IMG/VR virus record: IMGVR_UViG_3300032268_000832
Location: 62,001-126,000 of that record
DNA: 64,000 bases
Strand: one strand, 5' to 3'
The position numbers and the translations under genes were made by a program. Positions 523 through 62,020 of this stretch are shown here, in pieces; position 1 is the first letter of the stretch, and the number at the start of each line of letters is the position of its first letter. Under the pieces are notes generated by a model. It saw only the letters and a program-made list of their open reading frames with translations. It had not been told where the DNA came from and ran no database searches.

Positions 523-531
523 TATAAATAT
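523..531 (-). promoter_or_regulatory. Putative late promoter ATATTTATA
   Basis: Recurrent motif, 13 nt upstream of ATG 509. Confidence 0.65.
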
Positions 532-548
532 CACAAAACTTAATAAAA

Positions 549-1550
549 TTAATTGATTCTAATGTTTTTAGATAACATAGTTTCTTCAAGTTTGGCAGCG
601 TTCTTTTGAAATTCAAAAACAGCTTGTTTATTACCATCTATTGTTAAATCAGTTGGTGGTTTACCGTTACCGTTATGTACGTGTGATAAGAAAGCTTCTT
701 TAAGTAAAATAAGGTATTGTAATAACACGTCGCCAAATGGTAATTGATGAGCGGTGGTTAATATTTTTTCCAATTCATCTGTTGATATTAAATCAACGTT
801 ATTTGTAGTGTTAAAATTAGGTGAACCACCATGAGTTATAAAATTTATTTTATTTGATACGATATTGGTTACGCTACCTACTCTATCAGAAACTTCAGTT
901 TCAGTTAATTTTGGTAAATTAACTTTGTTTTTGATTTGAATATAAGCTTGAGTTTCCGTATTAAATTTAATAGGGTAAGGGTTTGTTTGTGTGATTTGAG
1001 ACTCCACAAATTTACCAGCTCTAATAACTATTTCATTATCTTTTTGTGTGATGTCTGTATTGTATCTACCTTGAATTGAAATATCGTTTGGGTTCGGGAA
1101 AACACCTTTTAATTCAGGAATATTAGCTGGTGTAACGTTTGGTGCCACTGGACCAAAGGTAAACCCAGCCAACGCAGTTGTTCTGGCAGAATCAAAACTA
1201 AGTTTATTTAACTGAGAAATAATTGGCCCGATATATAAACGGTCAGCGCTTTCTTTTTGTTTGTTTAGTAAAAAGATTAACACCATTTCACCCACTTTAG
1301 GTTTTATTGATAAGTGTTTTGGTAATAAAGGTAAACACCATGGTAAAGCGTCATATCCACTAACACCTTCACCTAATAACTCGTCATCACCACCAGTTGT
1401 GACTGAACCTTTTACCCAAACTTTAACTCTATCTAAACCCAAAGGGTCATCAACGGCCATAACCTCACCAAATTTTAAATATTGAAAATTTAATGGGTCG
1501 TTGTCGTTGTTTTTTACACCTCTAGTTAATCTATTACTACCTTCTAACAT
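549..1550 (-). CDS. Baseplate central spike (gp5/gpV-like)
   Basis: N-terminal OB-fold pattern GEV..VDDPLGLDRVKV...PWCLPL...PKVGEMV; C-terminal HxH (SHVH) spike-tip motif. Confidence 0.7.
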   Translation of the reverse strand: MLEGSNRLTRGVKNNDNDPLNFQYLKFGEVMAVDDPLGLDRVKVWVKGSVTTGGDDELLGEGVSGYDALPWCLPLLPKHLSIKPKVGEMVLIFLLNKQKESADRLYIGPIISQLNKLSFDSARTTALAGFTFGPVAPNVTPANIPELKGVFPNPNDISIQGRYNTDITQKDNEIVIRAGKFVESQITQTNPYPIKFNTETQAYIQIKNKVNLPKLTETEVSDRVGSVTNIVSNKINFITHGGSPNFNTTNNVDLISTDELEKILTTAHQLPFGDVLLQYLILLKEAFLSHVHNGNGKPPTDLTIDGNKQAVFEFQKNAAKLEETMLSKNIRIN

Positions 1551-1732
1551 TAAGCTTCGTTTTTAAGTCTTTTTAAAATAATTTTATTAGCACTTTCAAA
1601 TCGTTTTTCAATTTCGATTAATTTATCGTAATCTTGAACCATTTTTAATTTTAAAGCTTCATAATCAGCTTCCATTTGTTTTATTTCAAACAAGATTTCA
1701 TTGTTTGATTTTTCTTCTAAATCTTCATTCAT
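1550..1732 (-). CDS. Small coiled-coil hypothetical protein
   Basis: 60 aa ORF, stop overlaps start of spike gene. Confidence 0.6.
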   Translation of the reverse strand: MNEDLEEKSNNEILFEIKQMEADYEALKLKMVQDYDKLIEIEKRFESANKIILKRLKNEA

Positions 1733-1736
1733 AATA

Positions 1737-2204
1737 TTATCTAATTATTCCATTACCAATACCCATAGTTGTTGTAACACCTTGTATTAATACTGGCGCA
1801 CCTAAGTTTCCAATACCCACACCCATTATACCAACTCCAGGTGGGATGACAACATTAACAACACTTTCGGTTAATATGGCATTTATTATTTCCTCACATT
1901 GAATCGCTAACATAGCTTCAGAAGTGTTTGGACCGTCAGCAAAAACATCACCAACAACTAAACCAGCTTCTGATTGTCTAGAGATAATTCTAGAAGCAAT
2001 TTGTTTACTTGAAACCCCTGGTCTTAAATTACTACCAACCATAATCAATGGTGGTGGTAATGGTTCCACTGGTGTTTCTGGTAATTTAAATGCTGATAAA
2101 ATCATATTTAAAACACCGTATATTGATGTTAAATTAAAATTACTTTCTTTGTTTATTCCAGTTTCTGAAAATTTTTCTTTTACATTTTTACCTAAGTCAC
2201 TCAT
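1737..2204 (-). CDS. Hypothetical, probably baseplate/spike-associated protein
   Basis: Operonic; Gly-rich beta-strand C-terminus. Confidence 0.5.
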   Translation of the reverse strand: MSDLGKNVKEKFSETGINKESNFNLTSIYGVLNMILSAFKLPETPVEPLPPPLIMVGSNLRPGVSSKQIASRIISRQSEAGLVVGDVFADGPNTSEAMLAIQCEEIINAILTESVVNVVIPPGVGIMGVGIGNLGAPVLIQGVTTTMGIGNGIIR

Positions 2205-3625
2205 TATATTAAACCTTTTATTGTTCTTAAAGCCTCTTGTGAAACACCTACTAGGCTTAATAATTGTTGTTTTCTATTTTGGGTTTTTTCATTTAATTTA
2301 ATTAACGCTGCTTCACCTGCTAACCTAGTCACTTCTTTCATAGCATACGCCATTAATTCTTTAACAATAATTTGAGTAACTTCTTTAAATATTGCTGTGA
2401 ACAAACTTCTGTTCTTTTTTATAAAATCTTTAGCGTCAGTGTATTCAGCGTTTTCACCATATAATATTTTAAAATTAATTAAAAATATTATAATAATTTT
2501 TGGTGAAATAACAACATTAGCGATTGATTTGATTAAACTTTTTATCATATCACCAACAAAACTTATTTTGATAGTTTGTTTGTCTTGATTGTCTGGTGTT
2601 TGAGACGCTAAGTCTTCAGCCATGTTGTTTATAGAATTTGTGATAACTGTTCTTTTTTCAACTAAACTTGATGTTTGATTGTATTCATCAGTAAAACTAG
2701 TTAATTGTTCAATTGGCATCGACCCATTAAACGAAACGCTAGTTTTTAATTTTATTATACCATTTTTTCTATTGTTAGCAATTTCTTGTTGTCTAGCAAT
2801 TTCTGAATTTGTAAATGTAAAATAATCATCATTTATTTCACTATTAACATCAGCATTTGCTAACCTATCTATAATATCATTTATCTCGGTTTCTTTTTCT
2901 AATTGCTTTCTTGTTTTAGGAGTTTGAACCGTAATAGAACCAAATAATATATCGATAATTTTGTTTATGATATTTTGCGCGCCAATTATATTTAATGAAC
3001 CAACATAATTATCGTTTAATTGATTAATTGATTTATTATTATAACTTGGATTAACTTTTATGATTAATGAATTGTTTGGGTTATTTCCTGTACCGTTTTG
3101 TTCAAATTTAACATCTAAAATATTTTGCCATGTATGTGTTACATCAGGGTCTTGGATAACACCATATAAAAAAGTGTTAAAATCACTACTATCAGTTAAT
3201 GGTGATGTTATATCATTATATAATAAACCACCGACAGGTGTGTTAGGGTCTATTTTTAATTGGTCAAAAAAATCTATTTTATTAACACTAATCACCACTC
3301 CGTTACCAGATGGTGGTTTTAAAAAACTAGGTATACTTGGGTTTAGACCACAAGAAACCATACTTTTTAAAACTGTTTTTATTGTTTGTTTTAAATCTTT
3401 TTCAATTCTATCTAAATATTTTGTTAAAGTTTCAACAATCACCTTAACAAATTCTTTTTGACCCACCAAAGATTTAACCAAATCGCTTAAAAACAAAATA
3501 ATATCGTTCCCATTGTTTACCGATGGGAACGAATTAGTTGTTTTTAGTTTTGGTAACCCAGAAACCATTGTTTTTGCAGCGGCAATTTCACCAAAAACTT
3601 TTTGTTTTTTATCTTTGATACTCAT
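2204..3625 (-). CDS. Hypothetical late (probably structural) protein
   Basis: 473 aa ORF in late operon. Confidence 0.55.
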   Translation of the reverse strand: MSIKDKKQKVFGEIAAAKTMVSGLPKLKTTNSFPSVNNGNDIILFLSDLVKSLVGQKEFVKVIVETLTKYLDRIEKDLKQTIKTVLKSMVSCGLNPSIPSFLKPPSGNGVVISVNKIDFFDQLKIDPNTPVGGLLYNDITSPLTDSSDFNTFLYGVIQDPDVTHTWQNILDVKFEQNGTGNNPNNSLIIKVNPSYNNKSINQLNDNYVGSLNIIGAQNIINKIIDILFGSITVQTPKTRKQLEKETEINDIIDRLANADVNSEINDDYFTFTNSEIARQQEIANNRKNGIIKLKTSVSFNGSMPIEQLTSFTDEYNQTSSLVEKRTVITNSINNMAEDLASQTPDNQDKQTIKISFVGDMIKSLIKSIANVVISPKIIIIFLINFKILYGENAEYTDAKDFIKKNRSLFTAIFKEVTQIIVKELMAYAMKEVTRLAGEAALIKLNEKTQNRKQQLLSLVGVSQEALRTIKGLI

Positions 3626-3630
3626 CGTGG

Positions 3631-4014
3631 TTATTCGTCTGTTTCTGTGTTGTCGTGTTTATTCTTAAACAGTTCTCTAATTGATTTGAAATCATCTAAA
3701 GATACTTTTCCATCACTTCTTTCAGCGATAGCGGCATTAGCGTCCCCTCTATTCTTAATAATATCACTTTGTAATTTAGCAATTTCTAATTTTACTCTTA
3801 TTGCAGAATCTTTAACTTTAAGTAAGTTACCTTTTTCTTTTGCTATTTTAGTCAAATCATCAACCCCATCTGGGTTTACACCAGTTGTTAATTCGTTGAT
3901 TGTTCTTTGAACGTCGTTGATTTGTAAACACGCGTCATTATAAGTTTCTTGCATAAGACCTTCTAATGATTCGTTATTGTTTACTTTAACATCATGTTTT
4001 CTTTTTCTAGGCAT
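3631..4014 (-). CDS. Helical hypothetical protein, possibly terminase small subunit-like
   Basis: 127 aa, two long amphipathic helices, first gene after a late motif; function is a guess. Confidence 0.35.
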   Translation of the reverse strand: MPRKRKHDVKVNNNESLEGLMQETYNDACLQINDVQRTINELTTGVNPDGVDDLTKIAKEKGNLLKVKDSAIRVKLEIAKLQSDIIKNRGDANAAIAERSDGKVSLDDFKSIRELFKNKHDNTETDE

Positions 4015-4030
4015 TGTTATTAGTTTTTAT

Positions 4031-4039
4031 TATAAATAT
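4031..4039 (-). promoter_or_regulatory. Putative late promoter ATATTTATA
   Basis: Motif immediately after the sigma gene stop, 16 nt upstream of ATG 4014. Confidence 0.65.
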
Positions 4040-4768
4040 CTACAAGCCTCGTTTTGTTAAGATTTCATACAAATCTTTAAATCTTTTCATCGCAATACGT
4101 ATGTCTTTGGTTGAAAGATTTGTGTAATTTCTCATAGTTTCTAAAACAGAGTTTTTATTATATTTTGAACCACCGTCAAAACCTTCAAAAGCAGATTCCC
4201 AATTTTCCAATATGTAAATTAAGGCTAAACCTACTTTCTTTTCGTTTTCGTTTAGTTTCTTTTTTGGTGGTAGTTTTTCGTCGTTCATTTCTTCTTTGAT
4301 ACCTTCAATAAGGTTTAAGATGAAATCATCCATAACAAAACTATCATTATCAATTACATAAGTTAAATCTTGGCGTTCCTCAAAATCAGTCATCATATCT
4401 TCGTAAGATGATGTTTGTCTTAAGTGTTTTTCGTCTTTGATTAATAAACCTAATATATAATTTTTACTAATGGTCCCGAAGTATGAATAAGCTTTTTTAC
4501 CTCGTCCAGCTTCAAATTTATGTACTTTCGTCATCAAGAAAGAAACGGTGTCACTATGAAGTTCTTCATAAGTTTCACCCTTTCTATATAATTTATATCT
4601 CCTGATGATTGCTTCTATCATTTTATCCAAAGGGGCTTTTAACCATTCATTGAATATTAAATTTCTTTCGTTGGAATCTTCTGATTCTAAAAATCTGATA
4701 ACTGCTTCTTCTTCTTCGGGACCAAAATACATTTCATTTGTTCTTTTGCGTCCTCGTTTAGTAGCCAT
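4040..4768 (-). CDS. Phage late sigma factor (T4 gp55-like, region 2 only)
   Basis: EELHSDTVSFLMTKVHKF...KAYSYFGTISKNY resembles sigma region 2.2-2.4 (gp55 NPFAYFTQ-type motif). Confidence 0.65.
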   Translation of the reverse strand: MATKRGRKRTNEMYFGPEEEEAVIRFLESEDSNERNLIFNEWLKAPLDKMIEAIIRRYKLYRKGETYEELHSDTVSFLMTKVHKFEAGRGKKAYSYFGTISKNYILGLLIKDEKHLRQTSSYEDMMTDFEERQDLTYVIDNDSFVMDDFILNLIEGIKEEMNDEKLPPKKKLNENEKKVGLALIYILENWESAFEGFDGGSKYNKNSVLETMRNYTNLSTKDIRIAMKRFKDLYEILTKRGL

Positions 4769-4777
4769 TTATCATTC

Positions 4778-5572
4778 TTATACTTCATACGTTATTTTTC
4801 TATCATTAGCAAAATAATATTCTTTTTTAGCTGTTTGTAGCCACCATTTTGCTTCGGCTGGGTTCATAGTTTCTTTGTAACTAGAAAATAAAGATTTTGG
4901 TCTTTGATTTACGTGTTTATACCCAAATTTTGGTACTGTCATGATTCTAACATCTTTAAATGTTAATCTTAACAAGAATTCATAAATAAACGTTAATTTG
5001 ATACTAGGTTTAAGTTTACCCATATCTTCATAGGTTGATTTTCTAACCACCATTCCATCAATGTTAAAGTTTTGATAAGCTAACAAAGCGTTGTTATCTA
5101 AAACACCTAATTCATCTGAAAAACTATTAGCCCAAACAGCTTCGTTTGTAAAACCAATAAAACGACCTTCAGAATCAACATCGATAACAATTGGTAAGAA
5201 TAAATCTACATTAGGATGAGCTTCTCTGTATTCAACAGCGTTTTTAAACCAAATCTTAGCATATTCATCATCATACTCTAAGATAGAAATCCATTCTGAT
5301 TTAGCAGCAGCTACACCAAAGTTAATTTGTGAACAAAAATCTGTTTCACCGTCATTTTCGACAATAGTTACAATGTCTTTAATTTCACCAAAATCTAATT
5401 TTTTAACATATTTTGAAACATCGCTACCTTTAGGTGTAACAATGATAAGTTCATCAGGTCTAACAATTTGTAGTTCAACACTTTTAATTGCGTTAGATAA
5501 TGAATTTTTAGTCACGTCGTCTAATTCGTGAATTGGTAAAATTACCGAGATATCTGTTTTTTTATTTTCCAT
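4778..5572 (-). CDS. Glycosyltransferase family 2
   Basis: ISVILPIH start, N.GV..AKSEWISILEYDD (DxD-like). Confidence 0.8.
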   Translation of the reverse strand: MENKKTDISVILPIHELDDVTKNSLSNAIKSVELQIVRPDELIIVTPKGSDVSKYVKKLDFGEIKDIVTIVENDGETDFCSQINFGVAAAKSEWISILEYDDEYAKIWFKNAVEYREAHPNVDLFLPIVIDVDSEGRFIGFTNEAVWANSFSDELGVLDNNALLAYQNFNIDGMVVRKSTYEDMGKLKPSIKLTFIYEFLLRLTFKDVRIMTVPKFGYKHVNQRPKSLFSSYKETMNPAEAKWWLQTAKKEYYFANDRKITYEV

Positions 5573-5577
5573 TTTTA

Positions 5578-6726
5578 TTAAGCGTTTGTAGTTTCTTTTA
5601 GAGCGTCTTCAAATCTCTCTAAAGTTATTTTTAATTCTGAAGTTCTATTTTCAAAAATAGCCCCATATACATCAGTAATTGCTTGTTTTTGGTTTTCTAA
5701 AGTATAAAGACCTTTAGATTCAGCCATACCTTCTAATAAATCACTTGGCACCGCGTCTTCTAACCATATTTTTAAGTAAGTTGCAATTAATTCAGGTATG
5801 TTTAAAGTTGTGTTAGTCCAAACACCATTATTTTTTACTGAAACATCACCGTTTTCATCTACACTTTCTAACCACTCTGGAACCATATTAGGTATTTTTC
5901 CAATTACTGGTGTATTACATTCAATAGCTTCTAAAGGGAAGGTACCAAACCCAGCTTGGTCATCAATCCAAACAGCTAAACAACATTTTTCTAATTCTCT
6001 AGCGAATTTTTCTCTAGAAAAACCTCTTAATTCTTTAAAAGTAACCCATTTGTAAATAGGGAATTGTAAATAAAACGCTTTAGCTAATTTTGTTGCATCA
6101 CCAGCATTTCTAGTTAACAAAGCAACAACTGGTGTTTTAGGTTTATCTGAAGGTTTAAAATATTCAGGGATTGACACTGGAACAACGTGTGTCATAATTG
6201 AAGGGAAAAGAGATTTGATATAATCTGCTTGTTTTTTTGAAGTTGTAATAACATCATTAAATCCAAAATCAAAATCCCATTTTTTACCAATAGGTAAAAG
6301 TTCTAATAAATAATCATAACTTTGTGATAATACAATTTTTTTACATGGGAAGCTTTTTACTTGGTCCATAATATTCGCGAAGATTTCTGGGATTATAATA
6401 AAATCTGAAGGTGTAATCATTAGTTCTTGACCTTCAATAGATGCATGTGGTAATTGTGCGTATTCTTCGCCTAACCAATCTGCAACACCTTGCCCGTTTT
6501 CGTCACCTCTAAGTTTATAATCATTTTTTTCGTGTAAGATACTTGCGTTGTAACCTAATTCGTTAAGAATTTTTACATGTTCGTAAATGTTAGCAATACC
6601 TGCTGTTGGGTTACCTTTAGTATCCAACGTGAAAAAATACATTTTAAAATTTTTATTTTCTAAATTACCGATAATTTCTTTTAATTGAGAAATTTGGTTT
6701 TCAATTTGGTTTTTATTTTCTTCCAT
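5578..6726 (-). CDS. GT-B glycosyltransferase (GT4-like)
   Basis: AGIANIYEH N-terminal motif; GFGTFPLEAIECNTPVIG donor-binding motif. Confidence 0.75.
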   Translation of the reverse strand: MEENKNQIENQISQLKEIIGNLENKNFKMYFFTLDTKGNPTAGIANIYEHVKILNELGYNASILHEKNDYKLRGDENGQGVADWLGEEYAQLPHASIEGQELMITPSDFIIIPEIFANIMDQVKSFPCKKIVLSQSYDYLLELLPIGKKWDFDFGFNDVITTSKKQADYIKSLFPSIMTHVVPVSIPEYFKPSDKPKTPVVALLTRNAGDATKLAKAFYLQFPIYKWVTFKELRGFSREKFARELEKCCLAVWIDDQAGFGTFPLEAIECNTPVIGKIPNMVPEWLESVDENGDVSVKNNGVWTNTTLNIPELIATYLKIWLEDAVPSDLLEGMAESKGLYTLENQKQAITDVYGAIFENRTSELKITLERFEDALKETTNA

Positions 6727-6744
6727 TTTTTTTATTATTAATTA

Positions 6745-7116
6745 TTATTGTACCTCTACTAGTATTTCGTAGTGTATTAGTGTGTTAAAAGCTATTTTAT
6801 ATGAAATACTCATTTTATCTAAGGCTCTTTCAGAACCTAATTCTTCATCCATTTCATCTGTTTCATTTAAAACGATATCAATCATTTCTCTTAGTAGTTC
6901 GTACATTGTTTGTTGAATGTACATCTCTCTTTCTTTTTTTGTTGTTACAACTTCAGATGTAATTGTTTTACCCTTTTCATCTTTAATTTCTTTGGTTACC
7001 GATTCGGTAATGAAATTACCGTTTGGGTGGTCTATTTTAATAATTTCTGTGAACTTGTCCACGTCAAAATAATATACCGAACCACCAAAATCTAGCAGGT
7101 TATCATAGTTCTTCAT
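6745..7116 (-). CDS. Hypothetical protein
   Basis: 123 aa ORF overlapping upstream gene. Confidence 0.6.
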   Translation of the reverse strand: MKNYDNLLDFGGSVYYFDVDKFTEIIKIDHPNGNFITESVTKEIKDEKGKTITSEVVTTKKEREMYIQQTMYELLREMIDIVLNETDEMDEELGSERALDKMSISYKIAFNTLIHYEILVEVQ

Positions 7117-7732
7117 AAGTAGTGATTTTTGTGTTTAAAATTTTATTTCTTAAATCTTCATCGTTAATAAATTCTAAGATTGAATTTAGTTCATAATCAC
7201 CTTTTACATCATGATTATACGATGAATTAATTTTAACAGATATTTTACTGTTAGGTTTTTTTGAAAGCGAAATTGGGTTTGATGTGATTAAAACATCAGC
7301 GTCTCCCCATTCATCTTCATTGTCCTTAACAAATCTAATTTTATCAATTAAACATGCTGTTTTAGATAAAAAGAAAAAGGTTGATGGGATGCTTTTATCG
7401 ACTTCTCGACTTACTAATTCAATTTCATGTTCTTCATCATCTTTTATGTCTGATAAAAAACGATTAAAGTGAATCATCAACCCATCTGACATCAAATCAG
7501 CGTGACCAAAAATTTCTAGAGGTGCTTCTTTATAAAGAAACGTATTGAGTCTGTTGATGTCACCAAACTCAAAATGGTCTAATAAATTAAAACTGGTTAC
7601 ATCTTCAATTTCTACTTCTGAATATTTTTTACCTTCTTTTTCTAATTCTGGTACAATGTATTTTTCATAAGTATAAATGAATTGGCCAATATAATCTCGT
7701 AAAACCTCATTTATGCTAATAGCTATTTTCAT
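7103..7732 (-). CDS. HAD-fold 5'(3')-deoxyribonucleotidase-like protein with degenerate catalytic motif
   Basis: MKIAISINEVLRD matches NT5C-type IAIDxDxVL.D with both Asp replaced. Confidence 0.55.
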   Translation of the reverse strand: MKIAISINEVLRDYIGQFIYTYEKYIVPELEKEGKKYSEVEIEDVTSFNLLDHFEFGDINRLNTFLYKEAPLEIFGHADLMSDGLMIHFNRFLSDIKDDEEHEIELVSREVDKSIPSTFFFLSKTACLIDKIRFVKDNEDEWGDADVLITSNPISLSKKPNSKISVKINSSYNHDVKGDYELNSILEFINDEDLRNKILNTKITTYEEL

Positions 7733-7736
7733 AAAC

Positions 7737-7767
7737 GAAATTTACTGGCTAAATACCTATAAGTAAA
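7737..7767 (-). promoter_or_regulatory. Putative TTTAC-N18-TAnnTTTn promoter (near-leaderless)
   Basis: TTTAC 7767-7763, TAAATTTC 7744-7737, 4 nt before ATG 7732. Confidence 0.4.
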
Positions 7768-7781
7768 GTAAAAATAACTCT

Positions 7782-8663
7782 TTATTTAAAAAAATTAATA
7801 ATTTTTCTAATAAACGGCGAGCCACCCTCATTAATAACACTAGGTTGTGTTTTTATTACCTTATCAAGTTCAGGTACAAAATGTTGTTTCTTTTTATAGT
7901 TAGGATGTTCAAAAAGTCTTACGAAATACTTTGTAAGTCTGTGTCTAACAATTTCATCTTCAACAAATTCTACTATTGAAACACCTTCTTCTGGTAAATC
8001 TTTAATCATTTTAATTAGTTCACTTAAAGAACTATCTTCTTTCTTTTTAAGGTCTATTTGATTAGTATCACCTAATAAAACTATTCTAGTGTCTTCAGAA
8101 AAACGAGTAAGGAAAGTTTTAGCATTACCATCGTTTACGTTTTGAAATTCATCAAATAATAGAATGGTGTTGGCTAATGACCTACCTCTCAAAGAACCAA
8201 AAACTTCCATTTTAATATAACCAGCATCTAACATTTTATTTGTCAACTCTTCACCAATCAATTTGTAGAACGCGTCAAAAAATGACATCATGATAAATTT
8301 TAATTTATCACGCTCATCACCTGGCAACGTACCTAAATCTTCGTCTTTTAATTGAACTATTGATTTAACTAGTTTAATGTCGTGGTATTTATCTGGGTTT
8401 GTTTTAAGTAACAATAAAGCTTCAGCTACACTAAGAAGGGTTTTACCAGTACCAGCTGGGCCAATACAAACGGTTACATCACCATTTTTAATAGAATTAG
8501 TTAATTTCTTTTGAGTTTCGTTTTTGTGTTTTAAATCTATTTTAATTTGAGACAATAAATCTTGTTTAAGGTTAATTGTTGATTCTTTAGGTGAAACCGC
8601 TTTTTTAGCTCTAGTGGTTTTTGTGGTACCACTTTTTGGAGCTGGTGTAACTTTTCTAGTCAT
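7782..8663 (-). CDS. phoH: PhoH-family ATPase
   Basis: GPAGTGKT, LGTLPG, LRGRSL, DEFQN, GD..QID motifs. Confidence 0.9.
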   Translation of the reverse strand: MTRKVTPAPKSGTTKTTRAKKAVSPKESTINLKQDLLSQIKIDLKHKNETQKKLTNSIKNGDVTVCIGPAGTGKTLLSVAEALLLLKTNPDKYHDIKLVKSIVQLKDEDLGTLPGDERDKLKFIMMSFFDAFYKLIGEELTNKMLDAGYIKMEVFGSLRGRSLANTILLFDEFQNVNDGNAKTFLTRFSEDTRIVLLGDTNQIDLKKKEDSSLSELIKMIKDLPEEGVSIVEFVEDEIVRHRLTKYFVRLFEHPNYKKKQHFVPELDKVIKTQPSVINEGGSPFIRKIINFFK

Positions 8664-8678
8664 ACGCTTTTTTTATTA

Positions 8679-8686
8679 ATAAATAT
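8679..8686 (-). promoter_or_regulatory. Putative late promoter ATATTTAT
   Basis: Motif 15 nt upstream of phoH ATG. Confidence 0.55.
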
Positions 8687-8687
8687 C

Positions 8688-9623
8688 TTATTGTTTTATG
8701 TTAGGGTAGTTTTTTTCAAACCATTCAACTGTTTCTTTTATACCAACATCAAAAGGTGTAAATTTAAAATCTGGTAAATAACTCATTAACTTTGAGTTAT
8801 CACTAGGTTTTCTAAATTGTCCATCTGGTTTTGTTTTATCAAAAATAACATTACCTTTAAAATTCATAGCTTCTACGATAACACCAACAACATCTTTTAT
8901 TGAAATTTCTTCTGAAGTTGATAAAATGATTGGTTCTGATTCGTTATAATTTTCTAAAACCCATAAAGTTAATTCAGCGACATCTTTAGAATATATAAAC
9001 TCTCTAAGTGGTTGACCAGAACCCCAAATTTTTAAATCGGTACCGTTTTCTCTAGCCAAATAACATTTGTGAATCAAAGAAGGTATAACATGTCCGTTTT
9101 CAATGTCAAAATTGTCATTAGGACCATAAATATTTGTTGGTATTACCGAAGTATAGTTTAAACCATATTGTTCTCTATAAGCTCTTATTTGAACTTCTGA
9201 CATTCTTTTAGAATAAGCATACGCATCATTTGAATTGTGTGGTGGTCCTAAATGAATTTTAGATTCTGTTAATGGATATTCAATATCGTTAGGAAACACA
9301 CATGTCGATAAAAAGGCTACCAACTTTTTAACACCATATTTTCTAGCTGCTTCAATAACATTGGTATTAATCATGATGTTATCGTAAAAAAAATCACCTT
9401 TGTATTTCATGTTACCACCAACACCCCCAACTTTAGCCGCACAATGAATAATTTTATCAACAGCAAAATCTTTTTGTGTTTCTATATTAGTGTAAAAATT
9501 AAAAACGTCTTCAGTCTGTTTTTTATCTCTAAGGTCACAAACTTTAGATGTAATCGCAATTAAATCTCCTTTGAATTGTGAGCCAACTAATCCATTTGAA
9601 CCTGTTACTAATAATCTACCCAT
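8688..9623 (-). CDS. fcl: GDP-L-fucose synthase
   Basis: GSNGLVG, AAKVGG, LSTCVFP, YAYSK, PTNIYGPNDNF, HVIPSLI. Confidence 0.92.
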   Translation of the reverse strand: MGRLLVTGSNGLVGSQFKGDLIAITSKVCDLRDKKQTEDVFNFYTNIETQKDFAVDKIIHCAAKVGGVGGNMKYKGDFFYDNIMINTNVIEAARKYGVKKLVAFLSTCVFPNDIEYPLTESKIHLGPPHNSNDAYAYSKRMSEVQIRAYREQYGLNYTSVIPTNIYGPNDNFDIENGHVIPSLIHKCYLARENGTDLKIWGSGQPLREFIYSKDVAELTLWVLENYNESEPIILSTSEEISIKDVVGVIVEAMNFKGNVIFDKTKPDGQFRKPSDNSKLMSYLPDFKFTPFDVGIKETVEWFEKNYPNIKQ

Positions 9624-9625
9624 AA

Positions 9626-10606: not shown

Positions 10607-11199
10607 TATAAATATTTTTCTTTAAACGCTTCTATTGAAATTAAATTTATTGCCTTTTCTCTATTTTTTTCTAAAAAACTATAATCATAACAATTTTCAC
10701 CATCATTAATTTTTAATAATTCTTGAGAACCCTTTTTAATAATACCACAACCTTCATCAGTGTTTACGGTAAATATTTCCAATTCTGGGTTTTCCATTCT
10801 TAATTGTACAATAGCTTTCCACACATCACCATGCCATGCATCACTCGCGCGCTCTCTTCTTTGAGTTATTTCGGTAACTGGATTACAATCGTGTACAACA
10901 ATAACACCATTGTCATTTAAAAATTCTAAGGAATTTGTTATGTCTCTATAAACTTGTTCATGTAAATGTAACCCATCAACAAAAACAATATCATATTTTT
11001 GAGAAACATGTTTTTCAAAAAAGTCATCCGAGGTCATTTTGTAAGTTGTATCCACATTTGGGTCGACACCGTGTTTAGTTGGAACGTTAACACCAACCCA
11101 ATTATACCCAGGTTGTGCTGGTGTGTTTACACCAATCTCTAAATAAGAAGTGTATTTATTTTTTTCAATTAATCCGTTTATTATTTCTGTTCTTGTCAT
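10606..11199 (-). CDS. Class I SAM-dependent methyltransferase (Methyltransf_24-like)
   Basis: YLEIGV, YDIVFVDGLH, VVHDCNP. Confidence 0.8.
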   Translation of the reverse strand: MTRTEIINGLIEKNKYTSYLEIGVNTPAQPGYNWVGVNVPTKHGVDPNVDTTYKMTSDDFFEKHVSQKYDIVFVDGLHLHEQVYRDITNSLEFLNDNGVIVVHDCNPVTEITQRRERASDAWHGDVWKAIVQLRMENPELEIFTVNTDEGCGIIKKGSQELLKINDGENCYDYSFLEKNREKAINLISIEAFKEKYL

Positions 11200-12035: not shown

Positions 12036-12036
12036 A

Positions 12037-15249: not shown

Positions 15250-15252
15250 AAT

Positions 15253-16564: not shown

Positions 16565-16567
16565 AGA

Positions 16568-23925: not shown

Positions 23926-23956
23926 CAAATATACGCATAAAAAACATAAAAATCAA
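23926..23956 (-). promoter_or_regulatory. Bacteroidota sigmaA-type promoter TTG-N20-TATATTTG
   Basis: Consensus match upstream of HD-dut-guaC-GT operon. Confidence 0.65.
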
Positions 23957-28408: not shown

Positions 28409-28440
28409 TATAAATATATTGAAAACATAGAATATTTATA
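28409..28440. promoter_or_regulatory. Back-to-back divergent late promoters
   Basis: TATAAATAT 28409-28417 and ATATTTATA 28432-28440 at the strand switch. Confidence 0.7.
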
Positions 28441-32129: not shown

Positions 32130-32138
32130 ATATTTATA
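32130..32138 (+). promoter_or_regulatory. Putative late promoter ATATTTATA
   Basis: 14 nt upstream of ATG 32153. Confidence 0.65.
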
Positions 32139-34030: not shown

Positions 34031-34061
34031 TTGTCTAATAATAAAATGTTTAGTATATTTG
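34031..34061 (+). promoter_or_regulatory. Bacteroidota sigmaA-type promoter TTG-N20-TATATTTG
   Basis: Consensus match 16 nt upstream of polB ATG. Confidence 0.7.
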
Positions 34062-39025: not shown

Positions 39026-39034
39026 TATAAATAT
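39026..39034 (-). promoter_or_regulatory. Putative late promoter ATATTTATA
   Basis: 14 nt upstream of ATG 39011. Confidence 0.65.
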
Positions 39035-41215: not shown

Positions 41216-41229
41216 TATAAATATTTATA
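41216..41229. promoter_or_regulatory. Palindromic late motif TATAAATATTTATA
   Basis: ATATTTATA 14 nt upstream of ATG 41244; readable on both strands. Confidence 0.6.
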
Positions 41230-47179: not shown

Positions 47180-47200
47180 ATATTTATTTATAAATAAATA
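47180..47200 (+). promoter_or_regulatory. Putative late promoter ATATTTAT overlapping a 20 bp AT palindrome
   Basis: Motif 47180-47187; TATTTATTTATAAATAAATA 47181-47200. Confidence 0.55.
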
Positions 47201-50492: not shown

Positions 50493-50500
50493 ATATTTAT
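50493..50500 (+). promoter_or_regulatory. Putative late promoter ATATTTAT
   Basis: 50 nt upstream of sheath ATG. Confidence 0.6.
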
Positions 50501-53423: not shown

Positions 53424-53453
53424 AAAAAGGCTTCCTTAGTGGGAGCTTTTTTT
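53424..53453 (+). terminator. Intrinsic terminator
   Basis: aaaaaggcttcc...gggagcttttttt after sheath stop. Confidence 0.7.
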
Positions 53454-53463: not shown

Positions 53464-53471
53464 ATATTTAT
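53464..53471 (+). promoter_or_regulatory. Putative late promoter ATATTTAT
   Basis: 14 nt upstream of ATG 53486. Confidence 0.6.
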
Positions 53472-53485: not shown

Positions 53486-53857
53486 ATGAAGCTTATAATT
53501 ACAGAAACACAATACAATAGACTTTTTTTAAACGAAGAAAAAGAAGTATCATTCAATTTTGATAATGACACCATATTGGCGTTCGGAAAATTAATTGGAT
53601 TACCAATGAAAGGTCAAAACGGTTTTTTAGCTGATAGAGCGTTAGATAACCAAGAAGTATTATCTAAGATTTATTCAATTATGACAAATGTTAATGAGAA
53701 GAATAAAATTATCGATGATTTGGGGAATAAAGGTATGGTTGATTCAGATAAAAAACTACATGATAATATTGAATCAATCGTTACAAATTTTAACAAATAT
53801 TCAAAGGATAAAACATTAAATTTGGATACCGTGTTAAATAAAATACTTAGAAAATAA
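53486..53857 (+). CDS. Putative internal head protein with IITETQY leader
   Basis: MKLIITETQYNRLFLNE; leader shared with 58037. Confidence 0.55.
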   Translation: MKLIITETQYNRLFLNEEKEVSFNFDNDTILAFGKLIGLPMKGQNGFLADRALDNQEVLSKIYSIMTNVNEKNKIIDDLGNKGMVDSDKKLHDNIESIVTNFNKYSKDKTLNLDTVLNKILRK

Positions 53858-53896: not shown

Positions 53897-53905
53897 ATAT
53901 TTATA
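53897..53905 (+). promoter_or_regulatory. Putative late promoter ATATTTATA
   Basis: Upstream of tail tube gene. Confidence 0.6.
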
Positions 53906-53968: not shown

Positions 53969-54457
53969 ATGGCTGATTTATTAATGAAAATGCCCCTACC
54001 ATACGAGCCTAAGAAAAAGAATCGTTGGTTAATTACATTTCCAGCTGACTTAGGTATCCAACAATGGTGGTTATCTTCAGCATCTAGACCTTCAATAACA
54101 CAAAATGAGGTTGAGATTCCTTTCCTAAACACATCTACATGGGTTATTGGTAGATTTACTTGGGAAGCAATTGACGTTACATTCCGTGACCCAATTGGTC
54201 CTTCTGCTACTCAAGCAATTATGGAATGGGTTCGTCTTCACTCTGAATCAATCACAGGTCGTCAAGGTTACGCTGCTGGTTATAAAAGACCAGTTGAGTT
54301 AGAAATGCTTGACCCGACAGGTGTTGTTATCGAGAAATGGTTATTAGATGGAACTATGCTTACAAATGTAGGATTTGGTGATTTATCATTTGAGGATGAT
54401 GGTATCGCTGAGATTACAGCAACTCTTAGGTTTGATAGAGCAATCTTATTATTCTAA
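53969..54457 (+). CDS. Tail tube protein (gp19-like)
   Basis: EPKKKNRW, RPSI, GRFTWEAIDVTFRDPI, MEW, LDPTGVVIEKWLL.G, FGDL. Confidence 0.9.
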   Translation: MADLLMKMPLPYEPKKKNRWLITFPADLGIQQWWLSSASRPSITQNEVEIPFLNTSTWVIGRFTWEAIDVTFRDPIGPSATQAIMEWVRLHSESITGRQGYAAGYKRPVELEMLDPTGVVIEKWLLDGTMLTNVGFGDLSFEDDGIAEITATLRFDRAILLF

Positions 54458-54498: not shown

Positions 54499-54526
54499 AA
54501 AAACCATCTTTTTAGGTGGTTTTTTT
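54499..54526 (+). terminator. Intrinsic terminator
   Basis: aaaaaccatct-tttt-aggtggttttttt. Confidence 0.7.
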
Positions 54527-54537: not shown

Positions 54538-54546
54538 ATATTTATA
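54538..54546 (+). promoter_or_regulatory. Putative late promoter ATATTTATA
   Basis: 11 nt upstream of ATG 54558. Confidence 0.65.
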
Positions 54547-55709: not shown

Positions 55710-55758
55710 ATTTACAAAAAAATTAACTTTCTTATATTTATTTTTAAATAGTTTTAAA

Positions 55759-56454
55759 ATGAATAAACAAGTTAAAAATAAAAAAGAAATTTTAAGTGGA
55801 GACACCTTAGAGATTAAACATTTAAATGGTGTTAAAAGTTATTTAAAAAAAACACCACCTATTGGGAATAGACATGAGGATGCGAAAAGTATTAAAGGTG
55901 ATTATCCTAAATCAATTAATGAATATTTAGATAAAAGGAAAAATGAGGTTCCTATGTATGACCCTAAAACAGGTGAACCAAATCCTTATTATGAAAAGTT
56001 AACTGGTAATAAAAATCCTTTGTTAGAAACACCTAAAATGATAAATCCTAATATTAAAGAACCTAAATTAAAAAATAGGTTTTTAGTTCATTTACCAAAA
56101 GAATTTGGTATTGATATATGGGATGTTAAAAATATAAACAGACCTACAGTTATTTTAAAACCAAAAAAAATTTTAGGGTTAACTTATGGTTATGAAAAAA
56201 ATTGTTCTCAAATAAACATTGAATTTTATGACAAAATACAAAATAAAAATAAAAACCTATTAAATTATTTAGAAACCCAAAAAAAATTCTCATTTTATAT
56301 TGAAGAGTTAGACCCAACTGGTGTTGTAATCGATAGATTTGAATTAAGTCATTGTAATTTAACTTATCTTAGTTTTGGTGATTTAGATTATAAATCTAAA
56401 GAAATAAATAATATTATCTTATCAATTAATATTGGTAAATTAGAATTAAAATAA
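55759..56454 (+). CDS. Divergent tail-tube paralog with N-terminal extension
   Basis: EPKLKNRF...RPTV...IEFYD...LDPTGVVIDRFEL...FGDLDY aligns by eye with 53969. Confidence 0.7.
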   Translation: MNKQVKNKKEILSGDTLEIKHLNGVKSYLKKTPPIGNRHEDAKSIKGDYPKSINEYLDKRKNEVPMYDPKTGEPNPYYEKLTGNKNPLLETPKMINPNIKEPKLKNRFLVHLPKEFGIDIWDVKNINRPTVILKPKKILGLTYGYEKNCSQINIEFYDKIQNKNKNLLNYLETQKKFSFYIEELDPTGVVIDRFELSHCNLTYLSFGDLDYKSKEINNIILSINIGKLELK

Positions 56455-57982: not shown

Positions 57983-58004
57983 AATCCCCATTTTGGGGAT
58001 TTTT
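57983..58004 (+). terminator. Intrinsic terminator
   Basis: aatcccca-ttt-tggggattttt. Confidence 0.7.
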
Positions 58005-58014: not shown

Positions 58015-58023
58015 ATATTTATA
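58015..58023 (+). promoter_or_regulatory. Putative late promoter ATATTTATA
   Basis: 13 nt upstream of ATG 58037. Confidence 0.65.
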
Positions 58024-58036: not shown

Positions 58037-59305
58037 ATGAAAAAGAAAATAATTTTAACTGAAACACAATATCTTAAGTTAACTAAATTTTTATTGGAAG
58101 ACATAAATAATGATTTTAAATACATTAAGAATGGTGATATTTTAAGTTTTACGTTAAAAAATAATCAAAACGTAAATTTAAAAATCACTAGCGTAAACAT
58201 ACCTAATAATGAAATTTTAGCTTATGGTCCAAAAAATGAAAAAATAATGTTAAGGATTGGTGAATTCAACGAAAAAAACGATTTTTTAACTTATCATCAA
58301 TTTGATGATGTTGCTAAAAAATACATACCTAAAAAAGTTTATGTTAAAGATATGAATATTTGGAGAGATAATGATTTATTTGTCGCTCCAGAAAATATTA
58401 CTAAACCAACAAATAATCAGTCAAATAACAACATAAATGTAAATCAACAACAAAATAATCAATCTAAAAATTTAAGTGGTTTAGAAGTTAATAATGTAAT
58501 AACAGTTAAAAATCAAAATGATGAAACTTATTCTATTACAATAACTTCTATTGAAGGTGATGATGTTTATGGTAAAGACCAAGATAATTTTGATGTTGTT
58601 ATTAAAAATATAGATGATAAAAATAAAGAAATGACAATTATTAAAAATGATGGTGATAATCAAATTGAAGAAATTATAAAATTTGAAGAGATTAACATAG
58701 AAAAAAATAAAAATAAAATTAACCCTGATTATTATAATGATTTATTTAATAAGTATTATAAAGAAATCATAAACGACCCTAATTTAAAGAAAGCTTTTTA
58801 TAAAGCACCTTCATTTTGGAATTATTTCACGTCTGCTTTAAATAACGAAAAAGCTAGAGGTAAAGGTATTTTTCCCGCATATGAAATAATTAACGGTTAT
58901 TTTAATAAAAAAATTGATGAAAAATTACCAGGATTTGCTAATAAAGAAAATAAAAGAGCTAGTTTTTATTTATTTGATGATATTAATATAAGGTATAAAA
59001 AAATAAATGAAGAAGAATTTAAAAATTTTACTTTAAACGCTGGTTATTATAAAGCAACTGTTAGACAATATGAAGCTGGGTTAGGTGACGTAAAAGTTTT
59101 AACATATAGAAGTAGTGGTGGGTCTTTTGGTTTCAAGATAATTGTAAAAAAACCAACTGGTGAAAGACCTGATGAATATTTTTGTGACGTATATGTTAAT
59201 AAAAATAATGTCGAGGAAAATAAATATTTTGTTGAAAATGTCAGAATTAAATTTTTAGATTCTGAAGGTTATACATCTTATGAAAAATTAAAAAAAAATA
59301 GTTAA
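58037..59305 (+). CDS. Putative internal head protein with IILTETQY leader
   Basis: MKKKIILTETQYLKLTKFLLE; two similar beta-rich repeats separated by an N/Q linker. Confidence 0.55.
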   Translation: MKKKIILTETQYLKLTKFLLEDINNDFKYIKNGDILSFTLKNNQNVNLKITSVNIPNNEILAYGPKNEKIMLRIGEFNEKNDFLTYHQFDDVAKKYIPKKVYVKDMNIWRDNDLFVAPENITKPTNNQSNNNINVNQQQNNQSKNLSGLEVNNVITVKNQNDETYSITITSIEGDDVYGKDQDNFDVVIKNIDDKNKEMTIIKNDGDNQIEEIIKFEEINIEKNKNKINPDYYNDLFNKYYKEIINDPNLKKAFYKAPSFWNYFTSALNNEKARGKGIFPAYEIINGYFNKKIDEKLPGFANKENKRASFYLFDDINIRYKKINEEEFKNFTLNAGYYKATVRQYEAGLGDVKVLTYRSSGGSFGFKIIVKKPTGERPDEYFCDVYVNKNNVEENKYFVENVRIKFLDSEGYTSYEKLKKNS

Positions 59306-61776: not shown

Positions 61777-61827
61777 TATTGATTATCAAGTAGTTATAAT
61801 ATAATATAAAAAAATAGTTTAATATAC

Positions 61828-61857
61828 TTGATTTTGTCAAAAAAAACCGTATTTTTG
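61828..61857 (+). promoter_or_regulatory. Bacteroidota sigmaA-type promoter TTG-N19-TATTTTTG with no downstream CDS before a terminator
   Basis: Consensus match in a 260 bp intergenic region. Confidence 0.55.
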
Positions 61858-61879
61858 TATATATAAAATTTAAAATAAA

Positions 61880-61919
61880 TAATAATAAAATATATAATTA
61901 TAATAATAAAATATATAAT
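61880..61919 (+). repeat. Two exact 19 bp direct repeats, 21 bp period
   Basis: TAATAATAAAATATATAAT at 61880-61898 and 61901-61919. Confidence 0.8.
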
Positions 61920-61940
61920 AATAACTTTTTAATAAAAATT

Positions 61941-61962
61941 GGCACATATTGTGCCTTTTTTT
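61941..61962 (+). terminator. Intrinsic terminator
   Basis: ggcaca-tat-tgtgcc followed by T7. Confidence 0.75.
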
Positions 61963-62011
61963 GTTTTAATATGTTTTAAACATTTATTTTTATAATTTTT
62001 TTGGTAGTTTA

Positions 62012-62020
62012 ATATTTATA
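62012..62020 (+). promoter_or_regulatory. Putative late promoter ATATTTATA
   Basis: 15 nt upstream of ATG 62036. Confidence 0.65.

What the first reader, a model, noticed from the sequence alone, without database searches (positions are those of the whole stretch)
523..62020. Late promoter ATATTTAT(A), the reverse complement of the T4 late box, with a candidate sigma factor
Seen: ATATTTAT on the sense strand, usually 11-17 nt before the start, at 523, 4031, 8679, 28409, 28432, 32130, 39026, 41221, 47180, 50493, 53464, 53897, 54538, 55734, 58015 and 62012. It mostly precedes structural or hypothetical genes, often just after a terminator, and not PolB or the HD-dut operon. Established: T4 gp55 reads TATAAATA on the sense strand. 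Inference: the gp55-like protein at 4040-4768 has a distinct specificity.
Basis: partly seen in the sequence, partly recalled or inferred. Interest (0 to 1): 0.6.

Follow-up and report, generated by a model that had tools for sequence, protein, structure and literature searches.

The report
Phage late promoter ATATTTAT and its sigma
A giant phage of Flavobacterium-like bacteria marks its virion genes with an eight-letter promoter, ATATTTAT, that is most likely read by a phage-made sigma factor distantly related to T4 gp55; phage and sigma belong to a large clade known so far mostly from metagenomes.

Summary
All 16 listed ATATTTAT sites exist; the minus-strand ones are 1 nt off. Each lies on the sense strand before a gene, and 13 of them lie 12-17 nt before the ATG. 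The window is part of a 306-kb phage contig. There the box occurs 59 times in sense orientation within 60 nt upstream of genes. An AT-matched model expects 6, and the reverse complement occurs 18 times. All 8 positions matter. There is no -35 element. An A follows 5 nt after the box in 55 of 58 sites and is the likely start site. Box-driven genes include tail sheath, tail tube, tail fibre and terminase. PolB, the HD-dut operon and other metabolic genes instead carry host-type Bacteroidota promoters (TTG..TAnnTTTG).

The 242-aa protein (4040-4768) is a real sigma-family protein. Its N-terminal domain matches T4 gp55 best (Z 10.9), and it has an extra C-terminal domain that weakly resembles sigma region 4. 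Two cultured relatives, Flavobacterium phage immuto and Microcystis phage Mel-JY01, carry a homolog and no other detectable sigma, and they use the same box before structural genes. A Cellulophaga phage without the homolog lacks the box.

The "reverse complement of the T4 box" is only a formal likeness. No transcript data could be obtained.

The parts
4040..4768 (-). Gene for a 242-aa sigma-family protein: an N-terminal sigma-2 domain closest to T4 gp55 plus a C-terminal helical domain that weakly resembles sigma-4. It is the proposed reader of the box.
   Evidence: Pfam Sigma70_r2 scores E 2e-4, 21.5 bits, below the cut-off of 24; 32 of 82 relatives match r2. The AF2 model has pLDDT 92. VIA-align gives gp55 (7d7d_F) Z 10.9, and residues 141-242 match sigma-H and sigma-E region 4 at Z 5.4. 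The predicted interface with Flavobacterium beta' residues 272-319 scores 0.77 against a best control of 0.28.
524..531 (-). ATATTTAT box before gene 3-509 (169 aa open at the window edge, no family hit).
4032..4039 (-). ATATTTAT box that begins right after the sigma gene's stop codon, 17 nt before gene 3631-4014.
   Evidence: The same junction keeps ATATTTAT or GTATTTAT in most of 79 related loci (about 70; a few hold neither or end at the contig edge) and in phage immuto.
8679..8686 (-). ATATTTAT box 15 nt before the PhoH-like gene 7782-8663.
   Evidence: The PhoH gene of immuto has the box too.
28410..28417 (-). ATATTTAT box 15 nt before gene 27894-28394. It is one half of a compact divergent promoter region.
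28432..28439 (+). ATATTTAT box 16 nt before gene 28456-30243 (595 aa, PHROG of unknown function).
32130..32137 (+). ATATTTAT box 15 nt before gene 32153-33535.
39027..39034 (-). ATATTTAT box 15 nt before the ATG at 39011 of gene 37872-39011. The TTG start at 39047 listed by the ORF tool is probably wrong.
41221..41228 (+). ATATTTAT box 15 nt before gene 41244-41771. It overlaps a minus-strand copy at 41217 within a 12-nt palindrome.
47180..47187 (+). ATATTTAT box 17 nt before the tail-fibre-like gene 47205-50246.
50493..50500 (+). ATATTTAT box 50 nt before the tail sheath gene 50551-53406.
   Evidence: The tail sheath gene of immuto has the box too.
53464..53471 (+). ATATTTAT box 14 nt before gene 53486-53857, just after the terminator hairpin at 53424-53452.
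53897..53904 (+). ATATTTAT box 64 nt before gene 53969-54457.
54538..54545 (+). ATATTTAT box 12 nt before the ATG at 54558 (221-aa ORF ending at 55223), after the hairpin at 54499-54524. The GTG start at 54516 is probably wrong.
55734..55741 (+). ATATTTAT box 17 nt before the tail tube gene 55759-56454.
   Evidence: The tail tube gene of immuto has the box too.
58015..58022 (+). ATATTTAT box 14 nt before gene 58037-59305, after the hairpin at 57983-58001.
62012..62019 (+). ATATTTAT box 16 nt before gene 62036 onward (1301 aa in the full contig).
34054..34061 (+). Contrast class: host-type Bacteroidota -7 box TATATTTG before PolB (34078-37839).
23926..23933 (-). Contrast class: host-type TATATTTG before the HD / dUTPase / IMPDH-like operon (23891 downwards).

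Best explanation
ATATTTAT is the single-element, -10-like promoter of the late (virion and packaging) genes of this 306-kb phage and of a large clade of related phages. Host RNA polymerase core reads it when it carries the phage-encoded 242-aa sigma factor (window 4040-4768).

Inferred mechanism. The sigma-2 domain docks on the beta' clamp helices. It recognises the box at about -12 to -5 on the non-template strand, using a conserved Ser-Tyr motif (S95, Y96) that aligns with the base-stacking Y97 of gp55. Transcription starts at the conserved A five bases after the box. This gives leaders of only about 8-13 nt, and leaderless mRNAs where the ATG begins at that A. No -35 element is used.

Early and metabolic genes use host-type TTG..TAnnTTTG promoters. 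The sigma gene lies in a long minus-strand unit that can be reached from such promoters, and also from the box before PhoH, which would give positive feedback.

Shown here: the motif statistics, the fold, the co-occurrence and the functions of the downstream genes. Inferred: the start site, the timing, and which protein reads the box.
For: Motif.
- Sense against antisense copies within 60 nt upstream of genes: 59 against 18, with 6.0 expected.
- Every single-base variant falls from 44% upstream to 17% or less.
- There is no -35 signal, and an A sits at box+5 in 55 of 58 sites.
- Eight ATATTTAT-[TA]AGT-ATG sites place the ATG's A at that same position.
- Sigma-70-type and TTGACA/TATAAT patterns are not enriched.

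Function of downstream genes.
- The box precedes tail sheath, tail tube, tail fibre, terminase and PhoH here.
- In phage immuto it precedes terminase, sheath, tube, baseplate hub, tail spike, a virion protein and PhoH.
- Host-type promoters precede PolB, HD-dUTPase, a protease, the CCA-adding enzyme, NAMPT and an RpoD-like sigma.

Protein.
- The model has pLDDT 92.
- The best structural match is gp55, Z 10.9, followed by sigma-2 domains.
- The top Foldseek hits in PDB and BFVD are sigma factors.
- hhalign against gp55 gives E 1.5e-4, and four of seven gp55 pocket residues are kept: I54, R57, F85, Y96.
- The predicted beta' clamp-helix interface scores 0.77 against a best control of 0.28. That mark was reached by 58 of 80 solved complexes and 2 of 110 mismatched pairs. 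The runs agree in at least 91% of contacts and the partner pLDDT is at least 77.

Co-occurrence.
- immuto (35% identical homolog) shows 19 sense against 1 antisense copy; Mel-JY01 (28% identical) shows 20 against 2.
- Neither genome has any Pfam Sigma70_r2 hit, so this family is the only sigma-like protein shared.
- Cellulophaga phage phi17:2, which has no homolog, shows 0 against 2. In T4 the same method recovers TATAAATA at 22 against 5.
- Most of 79 IMG/VR loci (about 70) keep ATATTTAT or GTATTTAT at the sigma/next-gene junction while the flanks and the spacing vary.
- 30 long loci show sense copies far outnumbering antisense copies.
- No phage RNA polymerase genes were found.
Against:
- The window protein itself is below Pfam's cut-off for Sigma70_r2, and the hhalign probability against gp55 is only about 51-53%.
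- The sigma-4 reading of the C-terminal domain rests on Z 5.4 matches only.
- The genome encodes two further, well-formed RpoD/RpoS-like sigmas that could read the box in this phage.
- One box precedes a DnaB-like helicase, and PhoH is not a classic late gene.
- One distant homolog-bearing contig (L027, 33% identity) shows no exact box in 20 kb, only GTATTTAT-like sites.
- The complex prediction may reflect memory of solved sigma-beta' complexes.
- The contig is about 86% complete, so missing genes cannot be excluded.
Confidence: 0.7

Rival explanations
1. The box is a real late promoter, but in this phage one of the two phage RpoD/RpoS-like sigmas reads it (G000 176521-177342 or 287999-288871). 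The 242-aa protein would have another role.
For: Both genes carry clear regions 1.2, 2 and 4, at 62-65 bits for r2. One sits behind a host-type early promoter, as a cascade would need.
Against: immuto and Mel-JY01 use the same box yet have no Sigma70_r2 match anywhere in their complete genomes. Sigmas with a full region 4 usually pair with a -35 element, and none is conserved here.
Confidence: 0.1
2. The box is read by host RNA polymerase holoenzyme (sigma-A or a host alternative sigma), perhaps helped by a phage activator or a sigma-appropriation factor. It would be a weak variant of the Bacteroidota -7 element TAnnTTTG.
For: The ATATTT core overlaps the host-type TATATTTG boxes of the same genome. 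The early promoters of immuto read TATATTTAG, only two letters away.
Against: There is no -33 TTG element. The T before the box is not needed, and the letters A-T in place of G are required. The box is absent upstream of genes in Cellulophaga phage phi17:2 (0 sense copies of 32 in the genome). The same box is used by a phage recorded on a cyanobacterial host, whose housekeeping promoters differ. The functional split between the two promoter classes is clean.
Confidence: 0.1
3. The box is not a promoter. It would be a post-transcriptional or translational signal such as an RNA processing site or a ribosome-loading element, or simply AT-rich bias in intergenic DNA.
For: In the Bacteroidota phages it lies at a rather fixed 12-17 nt from the ATG, and Bacteroidota lack Shine-Dalgarno sites (established knowledge).
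Against: In Mel-JY01 the box lies 13-44 nt upstream, mostly 32-41 nt, and several leaders show GGAG-like ribosome sites between box and ATG. In the window two boxes lie 50 and 64 nt upstream. The box often follows terminator hairpins directly. An AT-matched model expects 6 copies, not 59. The box is missing before early genes of the same genome, which share the same translation apparatus.
Confidence: 0.05

Closest known systems
Phage T4 late transcription: gp55 with the TATAAATA box (plus gp33 and the gp45 clamp)
   Same: Both use an 8-bp, A/T-only box near -10 with no -35 element, placed before virion genes. The sigma-2-like domain is the best structural match (Z 10.9, rmsd 2.6 A over 96 residues). 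gp55 is the only hit of the family profile in the T4 genome. The stacking tyrosine (gp55 Y97) and L54, R57 and F86 have conserved counterparts. The phages also share T4-type portal and capsid genes.
   Different: The box is ATATTTAT on the sense strand; TATAAATA itself is mostly antisense here (18 sense against 42 antisense). The protein is 242 aa against 185 aa for gp55, with an extra C-terminal helical domain. The gp55 residues that hold the flipped A-9 and A-8 (H95, T99, N13) are replaced by Y/F, G and variable residues. No gp33 or gp45-type clamp was detected by sequence.
Phage phiEco32 gp36, a two-domain phage sigma whose middle and late promoters share only one -10-like consensus (AATGTA near -11.5; PMC12276001)
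   Same: Both have a sigma-2-like N-terminal domain plus a compact sigma-4-like C-terminal domain, promoters defined by a single conserved element, and early genes left to the host sigma.
   Different: The consensus, the host phylum and the phage lineage all differ. Sequence or structural homology to gp36 was not tested here. gp36 needs the co-factor gp79, and no such partner has been identified here.
Bacteroidota housekeeping promoters (-33 TTTG / -7 TAnnTTTG)
   Same: Both share an AT-rich core (ATATTT) at a similar distance from the start. The phage's own early promoters follow this pattern.
   Different: The box has no -33 element. It has A-T where the host box has G, needs no T at the first position, and drives a different set of genes.
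Phage AR9 non-virion RNA polymerase promoter subunit gp226 (7s01)
   Same: A sigma-2-like fold (Z 8.6) in a jumbo-phage late transcription system with a single short promoter element.
   Different: gp226 is part of a phage-encoded multisubunit polymerase and reads the template strand. No phage polymerase genes were found here.

Membership tests
T4 gp55-type late sigma | A sigma region-2 homology domain that is homologous to gp55 | tested here: met
   VIA-align gives 7d7d_F as the top hit, Z 10.9, rmsd 2.6 A, 96 residues. hhalign of A1 against gp55 gives E 1.5e-4 at 51-53% probability over 104-112 columns. The A1 profile hits only gene 55 in the T4 genome (E 1e-3). The sequence signal is weak; the structural signal is clear.
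T4 gp55-type late sigma | A small protein without a sigma-4 domain, ending in a clamp-binding tail | tested here: not met
   The protein is 242 aa. Residues ~141-242 form a confident helical domain that matches sigma-H and sigma-E region 4 at Z 5.4, and full-length two-domain sigmas align over 154-182 residues.
T4 gp55-type late sigma | Reads TATAAATA on the non-template strand | tested here: not met
   TATAAATA lies upstream of genes 18 times in sense and 42 times in antisense orientation. ATATTTAT scores 59 sense and 18 antisense. In T4 the same method gives 22 against 5 for TATAAATA.
T4 gp55-type late sigma | Works with co-activator gp33 and sliding clamp gp45 | tested here: inconclusive
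   No match to T4 gp33 or to Pfam gp45-slide_C in G000, immuto or Mel-JY01, with T4 positive as control. Divergent analogues cannot be excluded, and the contig is about 86% complete.
Sigma-70 family | Region 2 (Pfam Sigma70_r2) | tested here: inconclusive
   The window protein scores 21.5 bits against a cut-off of 24. 32 of 82 relatives match at E <= 0.01, best 4e-7. Structure searches return almost only sigma factors.
Sigma-70 family | Region 4 helix-turn-helix | tested here: inconclusive
   No Pfam r4 hit in any of 82 members; only weak structural matches at Z 5.4.
Sigma-70 family | Binds the beta' clamp helices of core polymerase | tested here: met
   This is a prediction only. The score is 0.77 against a best control of 0.28; that mark was reached by 58 of 80 solved complexes and 2 of 110 mismatched pairs. 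The runs agree in at least 91% of contacts and the partner pLDDT is at least 77. The interface joins F. johnsoniae beta' 272-319 with sigma residues 30-44, 72-83 and 117-125. The pass may reflect memory of solved sigma complexes.
Bacteroidota sigma-A promoter | -7 element TAnnTTTG with a -33 TTTG/TTG element | tested here: not met
   No conserved upstream element. The box needs A-T where the host box has G, and any base is accepted before it.
Late (virion-gene) promoter class | Active late in infection, with start sites just downstream | not testable with these tools
Support is indirect: the functions of the downstream genes and the conserved A at box+5.

The most novel reading that the evidence does not exclude
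The sigma keeps the gp55 way of reading an A-rich T4-type box but reads it on the template strand, as AR9 gp226 reads its promoter. In 37 of 58 sites the template strand carries the full TATAAATA. This would be a sigma-family factor of host RNA polymerase that recognises the template strand and so reverses the polarity of the promoter.

A milder version is much more likely than that (perhaps 0.35). In it, the family is an evolutionary intermediate between two-domain sigmas and the sigma-2-only gp55, and forms an orthogonal sigma/promoter pair that works in hosts of different phyla.
Probability: 0.06. Interest if true: 0.85.

Novelty: new variant of a known kind. Interest (0 to 1): 0.55.

Why it matters
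Phage-encoded late sigmas with simple promoters are known from T4, SPO1 and phiEco32. None has been described for the large T4-like and jumbo phages of Bacteroidota, which are very common in aquatic metagenomes. This sigma family alone has 1229 clusters at 50% identity, on contigs up to about 360 kb.

The box gives a simple rule for annotating late operons and correcting start codons in thousands of such contigs. It predicts very short or absent leaders. It offers a compact, possibly host-independent sigma/promoter pair for genetic tools in Flavobacteriia.

The protein also bears on how gp55 arose, because it joins a gp55-like sigma-2 domain to a retained C-terminal domain. The idea can be tested at once in a cultured system, phage immuto on Flavobacterium sp. 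LMO8.

Tried and rejected
- A classical TTGACA-N17-TATAAT class was rejected: matches are not enriched (94 found against 102 expected). The TTGAC-bearing sites turned out to be host-type TTG..TAnnTTTG promoters.
- A phage-encoded RNA polymerase was rejected on present data: no Rpb2_6, Rpb1_2 or T7-type hits. The T7-type search had no positive control.
- A conserved T-tract 13-17 nt before the box in G000 looked like an upstream element. It is not conserved in immuto or Mel-JY01 and probably reflects terminator T-runs.
- A lineage switch from ATATTTAT to GTATTTAT co-varying with the sigma was rejected. Loci with GTATTTAT at the sigma junction use ATATTTAT at their other promoters.
- The small gene after the sigma was considered as a conserved gp33-like partner. 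Its products in G000, immuto and Mel-JY01 show no pairwise similarity, so no claim is made.
- The single-sequence AF2 model was unusable (pLDDT 48).
- The search for related loci failed with the diverse alignment and found nothing for the distant member P0264.
- Megablast of 25 kb against GenBank phages found nothing.
- PHROGs gave no hit for the sigma.
- No paper in the library mentions the motif as a phage promoter.

Full report
**Context.** The window is bases 62001-126000 of a single 306,463-bp virus contig with 30.9% G+C, CheckV-estimated 86% complete. Genes run on the minus strand up to 28394 and mostly on the plus strand after that. Megablast finds no close GenBank phage. The nearest cultured relatives by protein are Flavobacterium phage immuto (160 kb) and Microcystis phage Mel-JY01 (190 kb). 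These relatives carry T4-type portal and capsid genes: gp20 and gp23 are annotated in immuto, and a metagenomic relative has a Gp23 Pfam hit.

**Observation.** ATATTTAT occurs 32 times in the window, against 19.0 +/- 4.1 in shuffles. All 16 listed sites are real. Four of the five minus-strand sites are listed 1 nt too low (true coordinates 524, 4032, 28410, 39027). Each is on the sense strand of the next gene.
- The gap to the ATG is 12-17 nt at 13 sites, about 14-16 nt at the two sites next to the window edges, and 50 and 64 nt at two more.
- All 16 have an A at the fifth base after the box.
- In the whole contig the box occurs 133 times on both strands. 81 copies are intergenic, although only 7.5% of the contig is intergenic.
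- 59 copies lie in sense orientation within 60 nt upstream of a gene. A first-order Markov model built from those same AT-rich upstream regions expects 6.0 (P 1e-37). The reverse complement occurs 18 times.
- In the window alone the figures are 14 observed against 1.2 expected.
- Hairpin-plus-T-run terminators precede four of the boxes between 46 and 64 kb.

**Anatomy of the box.**
- All eight letters count. The exact 8-mer lies upstream of a gene in 44% of its copies. No single-base variant exceeds 17%, and the best one, ATATTTGT, belongs to the host-type class.
- TATTTATA, the true reverse complement of the T4 box, is upstream in only 5 of 46 copies when the leading A is missing (derived). 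The box is therefore ATATTTAT. A following A is preferred but not required (37 of 58).
- No -35-like element is conserved. A T-rich tract 13-17 nt before the box in this genome is not seen in the relatives.
- The next conserved feature is an A at box+5 (55 of 58), followed by A and then A/G.
- A subclass of eight sites reads ATATTTAT-[TA]AGT-ATG, which puts the A of the start codon at that same position.
- I infer that this A is the transcription start. The box then spans about -12 to -5, leaders are about 8-13 nt, and the subclass is leaderless. No data show this directly.

**Two promoter classes.** K-mer enrichment upstream of genes gives only two families.
- One is the box.
- The other is the Bacteroidota housekeeping pattern, TTG or TTTG about 19 nt before TA(T/C)(A/C)TTTG. 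It includes an array of near-identical cassettes before small ORFs in the first 12 kb of the contig.
- Host-type promoters precede PolB, the HD/dUTPase/IMPDH-like operon, a Lon-like protease, an RNA-binding protein, the CCA-adding enzyme, a polymerase, NAMPT and one RpoD-like sigma.
- The box precedes tail sheath, tail tube, a tail-fibre-like protein, PhoH and terminase large subunit, many large proteins without a family hit, and one DnaB-like helicase.
- In the annotated phage immuto the box precedes terminase, tail sheath, tail tube, baseplate hub, tail spike, tail fibre, a virion structural protein and PhoH.
- This split supports calling the box a late class. It is inferred from gene function, not measured.

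**The candidate sigma.**
- The 242-aa product of 4040-4768 scores just below Pfam's cut-off for Sigma70_r2 (21.5 against 24 bits) and has no PHROG hit.
- It belongs to a large family: 7566 hits in the 90% clusters and 1229 representatives at 50% identity, conserved over the full length, on contigs up to 362 kb.
- With an alignment of 82 members (A1), AlphaFold gives a confident model (pLDDT 92).
- An exhaustive structural comparison ranks T4 gp55 first (7d7d_F; Z 10.9, rmsd 2.6 A, 96 residues, model residues 13-113). Sigma-2 domains of many sigmas follow at Z 7-10, and AR9 gp226 at Z 8.6.
- Residues 141-242 match sigma-H and sigma-E region 4 only weakly (Z 5.4). Two-domain sigmas align over 154-182 residues with poor global rmsd.
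- The top Foldseek hits in PDB and in the viral library are nearly all sigma factors, with weak E-values.
- By sequence, the family profile hits cyanobacterial SigA region 2 (E 0.011) and gp55 (E 0.056) in PDB. hhalign against gp55 gives E 1.5e-4 at about 52% probability. In the six-frame T4 genome the only hit is gene 55.
- Seven gp55 residues are needed for open-complex formation (PMC7892883). L54, R57, F86 and the stacking Y97 align with conserved I54, R57, F85 and Y96. H95, T99 and N13, which hold the flipped A-9 and A-8, align with Y/F, G and a variable position. This fits a changed base preference, but the register is not known.
- A complex prediction of residues 1-135 with F. johnsoniae beta' 200-400 passes the tool's test. 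The score is 0.77 against a best control of 0.28; that mark was reached by 58 of 80 solved complexes and 2 of 110 mismatched pairs. The runs agree in at least 91% of contacts and the partner pLDDT is at least 77. The contacts are on beta' 272-319. This shows likeness to known sigma-core interfaces, not binding.

**Which factor reads the box?** The contig holds two more sigma genes, of 273 and 290 aa, with regions 1.2, 2 and 4. No RNA polymerase genes were found. Comparison decides between the candidates.
- immuto and Mel-JY01 each carry a homolog of the 242-aa protein (E 8e-37 and 7e-31 to the profile) and no Sigma70_r2 match anywhere.
- Both use the same box with the same polarity: 19 sense against 1 antisense, and 20 against 2.
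- In Mel-JY01 the box lies mostly 32-41 nt before the ATG, and several leaders show GGAG-like ribosome sites between box and ATG. The box therefore follows transcription, not translation.
- Cellulophaga phage phi17:2 has a host of the same class (Flavobacteriia) and no homolog. It has 32 copies and none in sense orientation upstream of a gene.
- The same method recovers TATAAATA in T4 (22 against 5).
- 79 IMG/VR loci carry homologs of 51-100% identity. At the junction between the sigma gene and the next gene, whose product begins MPRK, most of them (about 70; a few hold neither form or end at the contig edge) keep ATATTTAT or GTATTTAT. The distance from the stop codon (0-53 nt) and the flanking sequence drift.
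- Other promoters in those loci stay ATATTTAT.
- A 34%-identical homolog has the box after its gene (L029). A 33%-identical one (L027) shows only GTATTTAT-like sites in the 20 kb available.

**Expression of the sigma gene.** I found no strong minus-strand terminator between 21775 and the window start. The gene can therefore be reached from the host-type promoters at 23926 and 16568, and from the box before PhoH at 8679. This is inference.

**Comparison with known systems.**
- The system works like T4 late transcription: one 8-bp A/T box, no -35 element, virion genes, and a gp55-like sigma-2 domain.
- It fails the T4 membership tests on box sequence and polarity and on domain architecture. gp33 and gp45 homologs were not detected.
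- In architecture it is closer to phiEco32 gp36, a two-domain phage sigma whose promoters share only a -10-like consensus (PMC12276001). Homology to gp36 was not tested.
- The "reverse complement of the T4 box" is a formal likeness. Read 5' to 3', the box is the A<->T complement of TATAAATA, and the full T4 box appears on the template strand only where an A follows.
- Template-strand reading, as in AR9 gp226, cannot be excluded, but I rate it unlikely.

**Limits.**
- Gene calls in my scripts are simple longest-ATG ORFs.
- The host of the contig is unknown. Flavobacteriia is inferred from the promoters and the relatives.

**Verdict.** This is a new variant of a known kind of system, widespread and testable in culture. 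Interest 0.55.

Noticed in passing
G000 contig 700-12000 (outside the window): About 16 near-identical early-promoter cassettes (TTTGGTAG.., then TTATATCTTTGCACTCACAAACCAATTAAA) each precede a small ORF. They follow the host-type -33/-7 pattern and share a conserved leader.
   Followed up: partly
G000 contig 176521-177342 and 287999-288871 (L002, L001): Two complete RpoD/RpoS-like sigma genes (273 and 290 aa; regions 1.2, 2 and 4). One follows a host-type TATATTTG promoter. The other follows a hairpin that contains a textbook TTGACT-17-TATAAT. Their targets are unknown.
   Followed up: partly
G000 contig 23245, 27098, 57716, 164094, 200502, 209367, 239190 and others: Sites reading ATATTTAT-[TA]AGT-ATG, where the start codon begins 5 nt after the box. 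They are predicted to give leaderless late mRNAs.
   Followed up: partly
window 28395-28455 and 41217-41228: A 61-nt divergent region holds three interleaved boxes (28410-, 28432+, 28450-). At 41217 a 12-nt palindrome, ATAAATATTTAT, carries a box on each strand. The copies with T instead of A at box+5 are probably by-products.
   Followed up: partly
window 23970-23977 (+): An intergenic box points against the minus-strand HD-dUTPase operon, next to that operon's host-type promoter. It could give a late antisense transcript.
   Followed up: no
window 4778-21753 (-): A long cluster of glycosyltransferase (GT2-type) and related genes lies just upstream of the sigma gene. immuto, L027 and L028 show the same order: sugar-modification genes, then the sigma (followed in immuto by baseplate genes).
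   Followed up: no
immuto, L004 16000-27000: The early promoters of immuto read TATATTTAGGTATCAATAATTAAAAC (about 18 copies). They have an A where the Bacteroidota consensus has G, so the early and late boxes of that phage differ by only a few letters.
   Followed up: no
window 39047, 54516, 16570: The TTG/GTG starts listed by the ORF tool overlap promoter boxes. The real starts are probably the ATGs at 39011 and 54558, and a start downstream of 16570.
   Followed up: partly
window 34078-37839: The PolB gene product is 1253 aa, but polymerase families cover only residues ~45-780. The C-terminal ~470 residues have no family hit.
   Followed up: no
Mel-JY01 (PP395634.1): This phage is recorded on Microcystis. 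It has 34% G+C, a homolog of the Bacteroidota-phage sigma and the same late box. If the host record is correct, the sigma/promoter pair works across phyla.
   Followed up: no
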